A stretch of DNA of 64,000 nucleotides from Fimbriosthenelais zetlandica (Eukaryota). Location: positions 17,980,001 through 18,044,000 of the forward strand of contig OZ365110.1 of NCBI GenBank assembly GCA_977030845.1. The letters are read 5' to 3'. The position numbers and the translations under genes were made by a program. A model generated the notes under the pieces. That model was not told where the DNA came from. It did no database searches and saw only the letters and a program-made list of their open reading frames with translations. The first letter of the stretch is position 1; each line of letters opens with the position of its first letter. Shown one piece after another: positions 802-5,832 of this stretch.

Positions 802-809
802 TATATAAA
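802..809 (+). promoter_or_regulatory. Candidate TATA box of gene 1
   Basis: TATATAAA about 110 nt upstream of the ATG. A second TATATAAG at 901-908 is probably too close to the ATG. Confidence 0.45.
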
Positions 810-920: not shown

Positions 921-2069
921 ATGGCACTTTCTTGTGAGTGGAATTCTTCACCAACACTTAGCATGCGTCATGGATCTTCATCAAAGAAAAATAAAAAGCC
1001 GGCCGTCTCTGTCATGTTATTGGGATCTCCTGATGCTGGAAAAGGCGGACTTCTCCATGCCTACACTGAGGGTCGTTATCCGGACACTGAAAGACCGGAG
1101 CACAAGCGTGTTGTGTCCATAGTCACCTTCAATGATTCCACTATCAAGGTAAATTTAATACTTTTTTATCCATAAGCTTTTGAAAAAAATCATTAGAGAA
1201 GGAAAATTTAATTCTGGAATGTATATGACTGAATTATGAAGTGGTGGTTTAAAAGGTTTAATCTGGAAATATTTGACTCCAAACTTAAAACAGGGGAATA
1301 TTATTCTAAGGCTTGGCCTATATCAAATTGAATCTACACTTTGTGCTTGTAATAGTTTATAGTATCTAAGATGCATTTCAATATTTATTTACCTTAACTA
1401 GCCTTATAAGTTATTGAAATTTTGGCAAGATTAAATTGATATGCAGGGCATTGTGTTAATTAAAGTATTATACATTGGTAACCGGGGATGCTAAGGATTC
1501 TATATTTAGAATTATCCTTTATTACAATGGAGAGATGAAGTGAGGCATAGACAATGAAATAACCATACATTCTATCCTTTCAGGTGTGTGACACTCCCGG
1601 TAACATTGACCTCGCTTCTAGCAAAGAGAACCAGAAGAAGAAGAAGCACCGAGGATCAGCTTCTGGTCCTGTGGGACTAGTGGCAGTCTATAGTGTGGAA
1701 GATCGAGCATCTCTTGATGAAGCGGTAAAAGTCCTTGAAGGCCACCTTCAAGCTGGCAGCAACTTCCACGGCATGGCCCTTGTGGGCACCTGGAACGGAG
1801 CGCGGCCTAACGGACGAAAGGTCACTCACAAACAAGGCAGGGATGCTGCACAGCAAGTCGGTGCTACATTCTGCGAGGTGGCATGTTGTCAAGAAACGAG
1901 GCTTACCATCCAGGCCATGGTTAGAAAATTGGCAGAGGTCTGCCTCAACGAGTGGACCGTGCAGAGTGAGAAGTGCAAGAACATTGAAAAAGACAGTAAA
2001 GCCAAGAGTTCCTATCGTGTGTCAGTTAAATCTGCACTGCGATCCTTGAAATCATTCTTAGTTGTATAG
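921..2069 (+). CDS. Atypical Ras-superfamily small GTPase-like protein, gene 1; two exons join(921..1148,1584..2069), 237 aa
   Basis: ATG 921 in context AAACCATGG. Exon 1 has beta1+P-loop VSVMLLGSPDAGKGG. A phase-0 intron AAG|GTAAAT...TCTATCCTTTCAG|GTG joins STIK to VCDTPG (G3 DxxG). Exon 2 continues with LVAVYSVEDRASL (beta4/alpha3), LVGTWNG (G4 position) and GATFCEVAC (G5 position), ending in TAG 2067-2069. Confidence 0.88.
1149..1583 (+). other. GT-AG intron of gene 1 (435 nt, phase 0)
   Basis: Donor GTAAAT at 1149. Pyrimidine tract plus CAG ends at 1583. Splicing restores a continuous GTPase fold. Confidence 0.88.
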
Positions 2070-2190
2070 ATTTATAATGGATCGAATGAAGTGTGAACTT
2101 CCTCTTTTGTACAAATGATTTTCATAATTTATGTTTAGTTAGAATTCGTCTTTGGAAATAAGATCTGATACATTGTGAGGACCTTGCGCA

Positions 2191-2357
2191 TATATATAAC
2201 CCTGACTTAGCGACCACCTGACTAGCAACATCTGCCTAATGTGGCCACTTTATGAAGGGCTCTAATTGTTTGATCTAAACAAAAGTACCAAAACTTGACC
2301 CTCAACGGCACTTTCAGTGGTTCCCAAGGTTGGTCGTTTTACATAAGTTTATGTGTA
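2191..2357. mobile_element. Decayed MITE-like element downstream of gene 1
   Basis: Imperfect terminal inverted repeats: left TATATATAACCCTGACTTAGCGACCACC, right (reverse complement) TACACATAAACTTATGTAAAACGACCAACC. Resembles TA-flanked GACCACC...GGTGGTC MITEs of marine invertebrates. Confidence 0.45.
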
Positions 2358-2508
2358 CCCTGTTTTCCAACGACTATAAAAATTACAGGCCTCTACATAT
2401 GTCTACATTATTTTTTCACATCAGAACTTAAATATGAAATATGAATTATAGACCTTATGTAGAATATCATGATAAGTAAAATGTCACATAAAAAATGTCT
2501 CAACTCGT

Positions 2509-2529
2509 AATAAAAAAAATCCAAATAAA
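2509..2529 (+). terminator. Candidate polyadenylation signals of gene 1
   Basis: AATAAA at 2509-2514 and 2524-2529, followed by T/GT-rich sequence. Confidence 0.4.
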
Positions 2530-3217
2530 ACACGTCATTTTTGTTGGATATTTTGCTACTCTATGCTATTGTCTCTTTCTCTCTCCCTTGGGTTAATTTC
2601 GCTAAGGAATATCTGTAGATTTCTTACAAATTATGTATACATGGATAACCAAAAACAGTTTTAAAACTTACGTAGCCTAAATCTAACAGAACATATTGGT
2701 TATGTGATTATAACCTAAATGAACACACCTTTTTTTACATTTTTGTATGACACCTCCAAGAATGTGTCTATTTCTGTCTGATAACTCGAAGCGACACGCA
2801 ACCAAAAGCACCATGAGCCTGAAGCAACTAATCTGGCACGTAATTGCCTGTTTATGAAAACCCCCATCATTCATCAGCCCACATTATCCCACAGCCATGA
2901 AATATATGGGCATGAGGGAGGTCGTTAATAAGCCTTATATATATGAACACTCAATCACATATTGAGTGGGACATCGTTTGATTATTATCTCCCTTTAATC
3001 AGTGAATAATCTGATTTTCCCATCAGCATACATGGGAAGTTTTATATTGATTTTTCAGTCTAAAACTGTCACGATTCTCTCTATTTAGTTTGAATGGTTT
3101 TCTTCTGGGATAAAAGATTACTTTTGTTTATAGGCCTACCTCTCTTCCCAGTATATTATAACTACCGTACATAAGGATTTTTTGAGTGATTTTATCAGTA
3201 TTCCATTATCACTTTCC

Positions 3218-3227
3218 GGGATTCCCC
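3218..3227 (+). promoter_or_regulatory. NF-kB/Rel consensus site upstream of gene 2
   Basis: GGGATTCCCC matches GGGRNWYYCC. A second kB-like palindrome GGAAATTTCC is at 3510-3519. Confidence 0.35.
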
Positions 3228-3528
3228 GTGTCTCTATGAATGCATGCATGGGTGTTTCCCCTTATTCATCGCGCGTGCATACAGTTATGATTTTTCATTA
3301 AATGACATTTTCCAACGACTTACAATGTTTACTGAGTAATTGGACATTACCCAGTGAAAATTTTGATAATCATTTTGGGGATATAAACGGACCAGACTCT
3401 GTCAAAAGTCATTACTGCAAACATCTTGTAGGTGGACACATTGTTTCAGGCAAAATATTTTTACTTAATACTGAAAAGAATTCCTTTCTCTGGACGGTTA
3501 CTCTGTATCGGAAATTTCCTCCACAGTG

Positions 3529-3566
3529 GATCCTTGGATGTACTAGATCCTTGGATGTACTAGATC
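3529..3566. repeat. 17-bp direct tandem duplication
   Basis: GATCCTTGGATGTACTA x2 plus GATC. Confidence 0.9.
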
Positions 3567-3593
3567 TATATACGCCATAAATGATCGTTCTTC

Positions 3594-3606
3594 ATTGGCT
3601 ATAAAA
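3594..3606 (+). promoter_or_regulatory. Candidate core promoter of gene 2 (inverted CCAAT plus TATA box)
   Basis: ATTGG 3594-3598 directly followed by TATAAAA 3600-3606, about 80 nt upstream of ATG 3683. Confidence 0.55.
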
Positions 3607-3682
3607 ACATTTCCTGGGCTACAATTTGCGGTGGTATATCTTATTTCCAATACATATTCCATCAGATATTCTACGTTCAAAG

Positions 3683-4471
3683 ATGGCGATGTATTGGCCT
3701 TTGGGTGGAACCACTTTGCCATCCCCGTGGTCCGGTGGCATGTCTTTTAGAACTCGCTGTGATTTCAAAGTCTCCATTCTGGTAGTCGGAAATGGTGGCC
3801 CGAGAAAAAACAGTTTCATCCAATGCTGCGCCCAAAGAGCCTACAAACCAAAGGAACTGCCAAAAACCACCAGGAAATTCCTAGAGCAATCACTGTCGGT
3901 GAACGACAAGCGCTGCAAATTGAAAATGTACGACGCCCCTCGGCTGCTGGACATTAATTCCAAGCCTGATTTGAATTTCATTAAAAAACTTCGTGAAAAT
4001 GTTGTCTGCCTTCTGGCTGTTTACAACATTGAGGACGAGGGGAGTTTGGAGAATGCCATTCACGACATTAAAACATGGAAAAGCTTGCTGGAAATGGTAA
4101 ACGGCAATGAGGAGGAAGGGAGCTTAATTTCGACGACCATTGTCGGCACGTGGAAAGGGGAAAGACCACCGGATGTGACGCAATCCAAGGCGCGAAGCGT
4201 GAGGGAAAGGATTGGCGACATGGGAGCTCGCTTGATCACGACATCCTGCAACCCTGATTCTAACGTATTTTCACTGATTTGGACAACGGTTTCCAACGCT
4301 TGGAGACTTGTCAAAAAACTTAATGAGAAGAAATTGATTGGGGAGAAGAACAAAGGACAATTGTTACTATTTAGTCGGAGTGAACATGACATTAAACAGA
4401 AAACAGCATTTGTCGATAAGGCTTGGTTGTGGATAAAAGGGAAACTAACTTTGTATTCTCTACTGAATTGA
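3683..4471 (+). CDS. Atypical Ras-superfamily small GTPase-like protein, gene 2; intronless, 262 aa (alternative in-frame ATG at 3740)
   Basis: Longest ORF in the window. First in-frame ATG is 3683 (CAAAGATGG). Motifs: VSILVVGNGGPRKNSF (P-loop position), SVNDKRCKLKMYDAPR (beta2-beta3-G3), CLLAVYNIEDEGSL, TIVGTWKGERP (G4 position), LITTSC (G5 position). Stop TGA 4469-4471. Confidence 0.88.
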   Translation: MAMYWPLGGTTLPSPWSGGMSFRTRCDFKVSILVVGNGGPRKNSFIQCCAQRAYKPKELPKTTRKFLEQSLSVNDKRCKLKMYDAPRLLDINSKPDLNFIKKLRENVVCLLAVYNIEDEGSLENAIHDIKTWKSLLEMVNGNEEEGSLISTTIVGTWKGERPPDVTQSKARSVRERIGDMGARLITTSCNPDSNVFSLIWTTVSNAWRLVKKLNEKKLIGEKNKGQLLLFSRSEHDIKQKTAFVDKAWLWIKGKLTLYSLLN

Positions 4472-4811: not shown

Positions 4812-4817
4812 AATAAA
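4812..4817 (+). terminator. Candidate polyadenylation signal of gene 2
   Basis: AATAAA about 340 nt after the stop, following a U-rich 3'UTR. Confidence 0.4.
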
Positions 4818-5529: not shown

Positions 5530-5832
5530 ATATCCTGCATTCTTCCTTTAAGGCGATCTGGGAGTAATGGGCATAGTGAGGAGGATGGTAATTGATTTTC
5601 TCCCTGTGCCGCATGCGGCTCTCCAAAGATCAATCTTTAGGCTCTTGTTAATGTACACTGTTCTGGGGCTTAGCAGCAGGGATTTGATATCATTGATTGA
5701 AGACATGGCTTTTAAAACGGAGTCCATAAAAAGGAAGTGAGAGAAAGAGGGGCGGGCGATGATAAATGTACATGGATGAATAGAAGCTACAGTATAGCGT
5801 ACAAATGTAGTCCCAACCGGAATTAGAACCAC
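5530..5832 (-). mobile_element. LINE reverse-transcriptase remnant (RTE-like)
   Basis: ORF 5548..5832 has PSFSHFLFMDSVLKAM...IKSLLLS, resembling the SPxLFxxxMD...SLLYADD region. Confidence 0.4.

What the first reader, a model, noticed from the sequence alone, without database searches (positions are those of the whole stretch)
921..4471. Tandem pair of Ras-fold pseudo-GTPases sharing an unusual G4 replacement (VGTWxGxRP)
Seen: two adjacent same-strand genes with recognisable small-GTPase topology. At the G4 position gene 1 has LVGTWNGARP (1779-1808) and gene 2 has IVGTWKGERP (4139-4168). They also share AVY[SN][VI]ED..SL..A, but are otherwise very divergent. Established: G4 N/TKxD Lys and Asp (Ras K117/D119) give guanine specificity; known G4-divergent families differ from this (Rho TKxD, AGAP/centaurin-gamma TQD). 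Inference: Trp in place of the Lys and Gly in place of the Asp, kept in two long-diverged paralogs with open ORFs, suggests a selected ancestral trait. This may be an unnamed subfamily that is nucleotide-free, fills the pocket with the Trp, or binds a different ligand.
Basis: partly seen in the sequence, partly recalled or inferred. Interest (0 to 1): 0.8.

Follow-up and report, generated by a model that had tools for sequence, protein, structure and literature searches.

The report
Paired Ras-like proteins with altered guanine pocket
Two neighbouring genes in this invertebrate encode Ras-shaped proteins from a small, unnamed family that has replaced the guanine-reading motif with a tryptophan-containing one, so they probably no longer act as GTP switches, though this is untested.

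Summary
Gene 1 (921-1148 + 1584-2069, one GT-AG intron, 237 aa) and gene 2 (3683-4471, one exon, 262 aa) are same-strand paralogues (27% identity, E 2e-12; profile-profile probability 98.9%). Both are weak Pfam Ras matches, and gene 2 models as a Ras fold (pLDDT 80). Alignments to Sec4, Rab1A and R-Ras2 place GTWNGARP and GTWKGERP on the NKxD (G4) position.

An exhaustive HMMER search of 1.84 billion representatives found only four related clusters, all unnamed. Every member has G-[T/I]-W-x-G at G4. Next come ordinary Rabs with NKxD.

A third species keeps the same-strand pair on both haplotypes. A tree separates a gene-1 clade from a gene-2 clade, so the motif predates the duplication.

Reading frames are intact, synonymous sites are saturated, and pN is 0.27-0.49 between species, so these are not pseudogenes.

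No family member has the switch-I Thr or a catalytic Gln. The gene-1 lineage keeps the P-loop Lys and DTPG. Gene 2 has GNGGPRKN and DAPR instead.

Best reading: a lineage-restricted pseudoGTPase pair. Expression and nucleotide binding are untested.

Another first-reader note on this window (s1-200485) lists gene 2's P-loop and switch-II replacements.

The parts
802..809 (+). TATA box of gene 1, preceded by a CTTATCAGTG (GATA-type) 10-mer at about 781-790
   Evidence: Pattern scan. The 10-mer plus TATA arrangement is shared with the orthologue's upstream region in L005.
921..1148 (+). Gene 1 exon 1 (76 codons). It holds the conserved N-terminal MALSCEW, the degenerate P-loop GSPDAGKG (1023-1046), and the invariant Tyr in GRYP (1071-1082, the Ras F28 / Rab1 Y36 position).
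1149..1583 (+). Gene 1 intron (435 nt, GT..AG, phase 0, polypyrimidine tract), absent from the orthologues
   Evidence: Sequence. Orthologous ORFs are contiguous across the junction in L003/L006 and L004/L005. Reading through the intron hits a stop after 84 aa.
1584..2069 (+). Gene 1 exon 2 with stop codon. It holds G3 DTPG (1590-1601), AVYSVED (1683-1703), the G4 replacement GTWNGARP (1785-1808), G5 EVACC (1875-1889), and a basic amphipathic tail (2013-2066).
2509..2529 (+). Two AATAAA signals downstream of gene 1
3600..3607 (+). TATA box of gene 2, adjacent to an inverted CCAAT (ATTGG)
3683..4471 (+). Gene 2, single exon, 262 aa plus stop. It holds the conserved N-terminus MAMYWPLGGTTLPSPWSG (3683-3736), the degenerate P-loop GNGGPRKN (3788-3811), the invariant Tyr in RAYK (3836-3847), DAPR in place of DxxG (3932-3943), AVYNIED (4016-4036), the G4 replacement GTWKGERP (4145-4168), G5 TTSCN (4238-4252), and a hydrophobic/basic tail (4400-4468).
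4812..4817 (+). AATAAA signal downstream of gene 2

Best explanation
The two genes are members of a small, lineage-restricted offshoot of the Ras superfamily. The family was found in only about four invertebrate datasets. Earlier notes on this genome suggest a lophotrochozoan, probably a worm; this was not checked.

Shown: an ancestral intronless gene had already replaced the guanine-specificity motif NKxD with G-[T/I]-W-x-G-x-x-P before it duplicated into the gene-1 and gene-2 lineages. The two lineages have stayed adjacent on the same strand.

Shown: all members lack the switch-I Thr and the catalytic Gln. The Asp that reads the guanine base is a Gly.

Shown: the window's gene 1 keeps the P-loop Lys and DTPG, but a Gly replaces the Mg-binding Ser/Thr. 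The window's gene 2 has bulky residues at two normally Gly positions (Ras G15 to Arg, G60 to Arg) and S17 to Asn.

Inferred: neither protein works as a GTP/GDP switch. Gene 2 is a nucleotide-free (class i) pseudoGTPase. Gene 1 is nucleotide-free too, or at most a non-hydrolysing binder without guanine specificity.

Inferred: the invariant Trp (Ras K117 position) packs against the invariant Tyr (Ras F28 position) across the former base slot. This would plug and stabilise the empty pocket. The proteins would then act as constitutive protein-interaction modules through their conserved N-terminal peptides, the remodelled switch-I block (YPxxERP / YxPxxLPK) and their C-terminal helices.
For: Fold and homology.

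Motif table from the family alignments:
- G1: GSPDAGKG, GSPDGGKG, GGADAGKA, GKTDAGKS in the gene-1 lineage; GNGGPRKN, GNNDCIKN, GSSTSALS in the gene-2 lineage.
- G3: DTPG (three members), DLPA, DAPR (two members), HVQA.
- G4: G[T/I]WxG in all members.
- G5: an invariant Cys where Ras has A146.

The switch-I Thr column of Rab1A aligns to E/N/A/K.

The Trp and Tyr are 2 of only 11 invariant columns out of 175 ungapped columns. They stay invariant even in the L003 gene-2 orthologue, which has no P-loop Lys left. That argues their role does not depend on phosphate binding.

The family is monophyletic, with gene-1 and gene-2 clades (100/100, 94/92 and 85/82 support).

Synteny is kept on two haplotypes of another species.

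Purifying selection: between species pS is 0.71-0.86 against pN 0.27-0.49. Between haplotypes pN/pS is about 0.3.

The genes look intact: TATA boxes, Kozak contexts and poly(A) signals are present, and a conserved GATA-type 10-mer plus TATA lies upstream of gene 1.

Precedent: side chains block the guanosine site in p190RhoGAP pG1 (PMC5593906). The class i definition comes from the AAGAB paper (PMC12490416).
Against: - No biochemical or RNA data. No sequencing run could be listed for this species, so expression and splicing of gene 1 are inferred only.
- P0004 keeps a canonical GxxxxGKS P-loop and DTPG, and the gene-1 lineage keeps the P-loop Lys. Phosphate or nucleotide binding may therefore survive in part of the family.
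- Thr at the first G4 position is compatible with GTP binding in Rac/Cdc42 (established knowledge).
- The clustering of invariant columns at G4 is only modestly significant (simulation p about 0.04).
Confidence: 0.6

Rival explanations
1. The family, or at least the gene-1 lineage, still binds a nucleotide through its P-loop Lys and DxxG Asp but with changed base specificity. The base (adenine, or any base) would be sandwiched between the invariant Tyr and the new Trp. The proteins would then be ATP- or NTP-loaded, non-hydrolysing or slowly hydrolysing modules rather than empty ones.
For: P0004 has a canonical GKTDAGKS P-loop plus DTPG together with GTWMGDQP, scores 66 bits on Pfam Ras, and also hits MMR_HSR1. 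Gene 1, P0002 and P0005 keep GxxxxGK. Loss of the guanine-reading Asp removes specificity, not necessarily binding. There is a precedent for a GTPase-derived protein that uses ATP: SpoIVA (abstract of PMC7952092).
Against: The Mg-coordinating Ser/Thr of G1 is Gly or Ala in three of the four gene-1-lineage proteins, and the switch-I Thr is absent in all. The Trp and Tyr are equally invariant in gene-2-lineage proteins whose P-loop is destroyed (L003: GSSTSALS). Their conservation therefore does not track phosphate-binding capacity.
Confidence: 0.25
2. They are ordinary GTP/GDP switches whose G4 variant still accommodates guanine nucleotides.
For: The fold is kept. Gene 1 has GxxxxGK and DTPG. 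Thr at the first G4 position occurs in Rac/Cdc42 (established knowledge).
Against: The guanine-specifying Asp is Gly, and the Lys is Trp. The switch-I Thr and catalytic Gln are absent. The G1 Ser/Thr is Gly in gene 1 and Asn in gene 2. Gene 2 has Arg at both the G15 and G60 positions.
Confidence: 0.07
3. They are decaying or untranscribed gene relics. In gene 1's case, the gene would be broken by a 435-nt insertion rather than carrying a spliced intron.
For: There is no RNA evidence. The intron is unique to this species. The proteins evolve fast (51-56% identity to the nearest orthologues).
Against: Frames are open in every copy seen, across about four species and both haplotypes of one of them. 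pN is far below the saturated pS. There are eleven invariant residues, including the single-codon Trp twice. The insertion has exact GT..AG ends, phase 0 and a polypyrimidine tract, and exon 2 is fully conserved. Promoter motifs are conserved.
Confidence: 0.05

Closest known systems
Canonical Rab/Ras small GTPases (best sequence and fold matches: Rab1A, Sec4, Rab3A, Rab11A, KRas; for P0004: Rheb, RhebL1, RERG)
   Same: Same G-domain fold and secondary-structure order. The beta4/alpha3 block VYxxxDxxSF/L is shared. The family profile hits Rab1A at E 4e-11 and KRas at about 1e-8. Foldseek TM by target is 0.66-0.76. P0004 hits RhebL1 and Rheb at about 1e-7.
   Different: G4 is GTWxG instead of NKxD. 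G5 has Cys where Ras has A146. There is no switch-I Thr and no catalytic Gln. The P-loop is degenerate. No RabF motifs and no consistent C-terminal Cys/CAAX prenylation signal are visible in the alignments. Extra conserved N-terminal peptides and C-terminal helices are present. No robust assignment to the Rab, Ras or Rheb branch is possible.
Class i pseudoGTPases (AAGAB psGD, p190RhoGAP pG1/pG2)
   Same: A G-domain fold with degraded G motifs. The guanosine site is blocked by the protein's own side chains in p190RhoGAP pG1 (PMC5593906). Function is through protein-protein contacts rather than nucleotide cycling (PMC12490416).
   Different: No detectable sequence relationship: none of them appears among the best PDB hits. 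Here the proteins are free-standing and small-GTPase-sized, occur as a conserved tandem pair, and degeneration is graded across the family. The proposed plug is an aromatic Trp/Tyr pair, not a salt bridge or an extended helix.
Rac/Cdc42 G4 variants (TKxD, TQxD)
   Same: Thr at the first G4 position (established knowledge, not tested here).
   Different: Rac and Cdc42 keep the guanine-reading Asp and have no Trp. Here the Asp is Gly and the second position is Trp.
RGK GTPases (Rad, Gem, Rem)
   Same: Small G domains with N- and C-terminal extensions, no prenylation, and non-canonical switch residues (established knowledge). Rem1 and RAD models appear among the top AlphaFold DB matches.
   Different: RGK proteins keep NKxD and bind guanine nucleotides (established knowledge). 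No specific sequence similarity was seen here.

Membership tests
Ras superfamily small GTPase (Pfam PF00071 Ras) | G-domain fold (six-stranded sheet, five helices, in canonical order) | tested here: met
   The AlphaFold model of gene 2 built on a 29-row alignment has pLDDT 80 and pTM 0.72 with the canonical element order. Foldseek hits to Rab3A, Rab8, Rab11 and KRas have probability 1.00.
Ras superfamily small GTPase (Pfam PF00071 Ras) | Score at or above the Pfam gathering threshold (21.6 bits) | tested here: inconclusive
   Gene 1 exon 2 alone scores 24.7 bits (passes). Gene 2 scores 20.5 bits (just below). Orthologues score 20.3 (P0001), 31 (P0002), 34.9 (P0005) and 66.1 (P0004) bits; the L003 gene-2 orthologue gives no hit.
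Ras superfamily small GTPase (functional switch) | G1 P-loop GxxxxGK[S/T] | tested here: not met
   Gene 1 has GSPDAGKG (Gly for Ser/Thr). Gene 2 has GNGGPRKN (Arg at the G15 position, Asn at the S17 position). Only P0004 is canonical, with GKTDAGKS.
Ras superfamily small GTPase (functional switch) | G2 switch-I Thr | tested here: not met
   The column of Rab1A T43 / Ras T35 holds E, N, A or K in the family.
Ras superfamily small GTPase (functional switch) | G3 DxxG followed by a catalytic Gln | tested here: not met
   Gene 1 has DTPG, so DxxG is kept, but it is followed by Asn rather than Gln. Gene 2 has DAPR followed by Leu.
Ras superfamily small GTPase (functional switch) | G4 [N/T]KxD guanine-specificity motif | tested here: not met
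   G4 is GTWNG in gene 1 and GTWKG in gene 2. All 7 family members have G[T/I]WxG, with one extra residue in the L003 gene-2 orthologue.
Ras superfamily small GTPase (functional switch) | G5 SAK/SAL | tested here: not met
   G5 is EVACC in gene 1 and TTSCN in gene 2. The Cys is invariant at the A146 column.
Rab family | RabF motifs and C-terminal Cys prenylation motif (CC, CXC, CCXX) | tested here: not met
   Inspection of the alignment against Rab hits shows only a partial KLKMYD resemblance to RabF2. The C-termini are ...SFLVV and ...YSLLN. Cys near the C-terminus is inconsistent across the family.
PseudoGTPase, class i (no nucleotide binding, no hydrolysis) | G-domain fold with degraded G motifs | tested here: met
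   The definition is taken from PMC12490416.
PseudoGTPase, class i (no nucleotide binding, no hydrolysis) | Demonstrated lack of GTP/GDP (and ATP) binding and hydrolysis | not testable with these tools
   This needs purified protein and assays: mant-nucleotide binding, thermal shift, HPLC.

The most novel reading that the evidence does not exclude
The invariant Tyr (Ras F28 position) and the new invariant Trp (Ras K117 position) form an aromatic clamp for a non-guanine ligand, either an adenine nucleotide or another planar metabolite. In that case the gene-1 lineage (P-loop Lys and DTPG retained; fully canonical P-loop in P0004) would be a Ras-fold switch or sensor with a new base specificity. 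Gene 2 would be its nucleotide-free partner, encoded next door.
Probability: 0.12. Interest if true: 0.75.

Novelty: new variant of a known kind. Interest (0 to 1): 0.45.

Why it matters
PseudoGTPases are a recently recognised group, and few families have been characterised. This family offers a natural series under purifying selection. It runs from a member with an intact P-loop (P0004), through members that keep only the P-loop Lys and DxxG (gene 1), to members with every nucleotide-binding motif gone (the gene-2 lineage). All share one invariant change, Lys to Trp and Asp to Gly, at the guanine-specificity motif.

That makes it a compact system for two questions: how a Ras fold is stabilised once it stops binding guanine nucleotides, and whether the base pocket can be re-used for another ligand.

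The practical reach is limited. The family is confined to a few invertebrate genomes, and no function, partner or expression pattern is known.

Tried and rejected
- RNA evidence: two run searches (whole locus, RNA only; gene 2 alone, any kind) listed no run. Read laying could therefore not be used.
- Word-indexed protein searches found only P0001 with gene 2 as query, nothing with gene 1 exon 2, and only P0002 with the family alignment. The exhaustive HMMER search was what recovered the family.
- Two scans of JGI metagenome contigs found no relative.
- The first AlphaFold run, with a 3-row alignment, was unusable (pLDDT 47.5). It was replaced by a 29-row alignment that includes Rab homologues, which may bias local detail of the pocket.
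- NCBIfam gave nothing relevant.
- ESM Atlas look-ups returned only generic Ras/Roc/Arf clusters.
- Searching papers for the run and assembly accessions found nothing, so the species of the related contigs remain unnamed.
- Subfamily placement was left open. The family profile slightly prefers Rab1/Sec4, while P0004 prefers Rheb/RERG.
- Tail amphipathicity is moderate in the gene-1 lineage (muH 0.5-0.76) but not in gene 2. A membrane-binding tail is therefore only a weak idea.
- An introner or repeat origin for the gene 1 intron was considered: no other copy exists in the window.
- Ten other long ORFs of the window have no Pfam hit.
Full report
**Anatomy**

The first 4.5 kb of the window hold its two longest open reading frames.

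Gene 1 starts at ATG 921 in a good Kozak context (AAAACCATGG). It runs to 1148, is interrupted by a 435-nt GT..AG phase-0 intron with a polypyrimidine tract (1149-1583), and resumes at 1584 up to the stop at 2067-2069. The product is 237 aa. The junction (...STIK|VCDTPG...) matches the uninterrupted orthologues residue for residue.

Gene 2 is a single exon, 3683-4471 (262 aa). Its start, MAMYWP..LPSPWSG, is conserved in two orthologues.

Both genes have a TATA box at a plausible distance upstream (802 and 3600) and AATAAA signals downstream (2509/2524 and 4812). Upstream of gene 1, a CTTATCAGTG 10-mer followed about 10 nt later by GTATATA is shared with the orthologue's upstream region in another species.

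The remaining roughly 59 kb of the window contain no ORF with a Pfam hit among those tested.

**Check of the observation**

The peptides LVGTWNGARP and IVGTWKGERP are at exactly the stated coordinates.

- phmmer alignments of gene 2 to Sec4 place V-G-T-W-K-G-E on V-G-N-K-S-D-M.
- Alignments of gene 1 to R-Ras2, and of the family profile to Rab1A, place GTW.G on GNK.D.
- The two proteins are 27% identical (E 2e-12).
- A profile-profile comparison of the two lineages gives probability 98.9%, E 3.6e-17, with the motifs in register.

It carries no special meaning.

**What they are**

- Pfam sees only weak Ras matches: 24.7 bits for gene 1 exon 2 and 20.5 bits for gene 2, against a threshold of 21.6.
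- With a 29-row alignment, AlphaFold gives gene 2 a confident Ras fold in canonical order, plus a long alpha5 and an extra C-terminal helix (pLDDT 80).
- Foldseek matches Rab3A, Rab8, Rab11, Sec4 and KRas, with nothing more specific.

An exhaustive HMMER search of 1.84 billion cluster representatives, using a family profile, recovered only four related clusters:

- P0001: gene-2 orthologue, 56% identical.
- P0002: gene-1 orthologue, 51% identical.
- P0005: 42% identical to gene 1.
- P0004: 31% identical to gene 1.

Beyond these, the hits are canonical Rab-like proteins with NKxD. None of the four carries a source name, and all come from Logan or ENA contigs.

Every family member has the G4 replacement:

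| Member | G4 |
|---|---|
| Gene 1 (window) | GTWNGARP |
| P0002 | GIWDGDRP |
| P0005 | GTWRGTRP |
| P0004 | GTWMGDQP |
| Gene 2 (window) | GTWKGERP |
| P0001 | GTWIGSAP |
| L003 gene-2 orthologue (uncalled by the source) | GTWRSGQRP |

**Age and selection**

A 1.8-Mb contig of a third species (L003) and its second haplotype (L006) both carry a gene-1 orthologue. The gene-2 orthologue lies 8.1 kb downstream on the same strand in L003 and about 9 kb downstream in L006. The arrangement of the window is therefore conserved.

A maximum-likelihood tree makes the family monophyletic against Rab outgroups (100/100). It splits the family into a gene-1 clade (94/92) and a gene-2 clade (85/82) with the same species order in each. 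The duplication, and the TWxG motif with it, therefore predate these species.

All copies are open. Between species, synonymous differences are saturated (pS 0.71-0.86) while pN is 0.27-0.49. Between the two haplotypes, pN/pS is about 0.3 on few substitutions. The genes are fast-evolving but constrained, not decaying.

In an alignment of the seven non-redundant proteins, only 11 of 175 ungapped columns are invariant:

- an N-terminal Trp;
- the first P-loop Gly;
- a Tyr at the Ras F28 / Rab1 Y36 position;
- V, D and A of the beta4/alpha3 block;
- G, W, G and P of the G4 block;
- a Cys at the Ras A146 (G5) position.

Four invariant columns within eight residues is more than expected by chance, but only modestly so (simulation p about 0.04).

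**State of the nucleotide-binding motifs**

- No member has the switch-I Thr or a Gln after DxxG.
- The gene-1 lineage keeps GxxxxGK, but the Mg-binding Ser/Thr is Gly (window gene 1, P0002) or Ala (P0005). Only P0004 is canonical (GKTDAGKS).
- DTPG is kept in three of the four gene-1-lineage proteins.
- The window's gene 2 reads GNGGPRKN and DAPRL. In Ras numbering that is G15R, S17N, G60R and Q61L. This agrees with another first-reader note on this window (s1-200485).
- The gene-2 orthologue in L003 has lost even the P-loop Lys.
- The guanine-specifying Asp is Gly everywhere.

**Mechanism (inference)**

In Ras, the aliphatic part of K117 and the ring of F28 lie on opposite faces of the guanine, and D119 reads the base (established knowledge). 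Here the K117 position is an invariant Trp, the F28 position is an invariant Tyr, and D119 is Gly.

Both aromatic residues remain invariant in proteins that can no longer hold phosphates. The most economical reading is that they stack on each other and fill the former base slot, which would stabilise a nucleotide-free G domain. Pocket blocking by the protein's own side chains has a precedent in p190RhoGAP pG1 (PMC5593906). A fold that neither binds nor hydrolyses nucleotide is what is termed a class i pseudoGTPase (PMC12490416).

On this reading the proteins act through fixed surfaces. Candidates are the conserved N-terminal peptides (MALSxxW..SP in gene 1; MAMYWP..LPSPWSG in gene 2), the remodelled switch-I block (YPxxERP / YxPxxLPK) and the C-terminal helices. 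The gene-1-lineage tails are basic and moderately amphipathic. The gene-2 tails are not.

Long-kept adjacency makes co-regulation or a heterodimer conceivable, but nothing tested here bears on that.

**Main rival**

P0004 combines an intact P-loop and DTPG with GTWMG, and the gene-1 lineage keeps the P-loop Lys. Part of the family may therefore still bind a nucleotide without guanine specificity, with the base held between Tyr and Trp. I could not examine model coordinates or run any binding test, so this remains open at about one chance in four.

**Limits**

- No sequencing run was listed for this species, so transcription of both genes and splicing of gene 1 are inferred from conservation only.
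- The taxon is not established. Earlier notes on this genome point to a lophotrochozoan, 'probably worm', which I did not verify.
- The protein collections call genes on Logan and ENA contigs as simple ORFs. Intron-containing relatives would be missed, so the family's true range is probably under-sampled.
- Metagenome scans found no further members.

**Verdict**

This is an unnamed, lineage-restricted Ras-superfamily branch with an ancestral, constrained G[T/I]WxGxxP replacement of NKxD, kept as a tandem pair. It is best described as a new variant within the known class of pseudoGTPases. It is of moderate interest until binding and expression are tested.

Noticed in passing
window 1149-1583: The single intron of gene 1 sits at an AAG|GT site. 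It is absent from the orthologous genes in L003/L006 (genomic contigs) and L005 (which carries the promoter, so is probably genomic). This looks like a lineage-specific intron gain in an otherwise intronless family. No second copy of the intron sequence exists in the window.
   Followed up: partly
window 5577-5711; L001 4685-4819: A stretch of about 137 nt, roughly 1.1 kb downstream of gene 2, is 77% identical to a stretch about 2 kb downstream of the gene-2 orthologue in another species, although synonymous sites between the two species are saturated. No reading frame is shared. It contains a conserved 9-bp inverted repeat (AATTGATTTT ... AAAGATCAATT). It may be a regulatory element or a small RNA. 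There is no Rfam hit.
   Followed up: partly
window 47513-47937: Three tRNA-Leu genes lie in tandem on the + strand: one with anticodon AAG and two with anticodon TAG, the latter two scoring identically.
   Followed up: no
window 42000-46000: Strongly negative GC skew (-0.20 to -0.27) and negative AT skew over about 4 kb. The region includes a 205-aa low-complexity ORF (43106-43723) with no Pfam hit. It is probably repetitive sequence.
   Followed up: no
ENA ERZ26222911 contig holding P0004 (no DNA retrievable): The most canonical family member (P0004, intact P-loop) occurs as two 224-aa copies in tandem, 1.8 kb apart on the same strand. A near-identical allele or copy (P0031) lies on another contig.
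   Followed up: no
L004 1-20 versus L005 135-175: Contig L004 (run ERR14707600) begins about 30-38 nt downstream of the TATA box visible in L005, which is where a transcript would start. It may be an RNA-derived contig, and if so it is evidence that the gene-1 orthologue is transcribed. The library type could not be checked.
   Followed up: no
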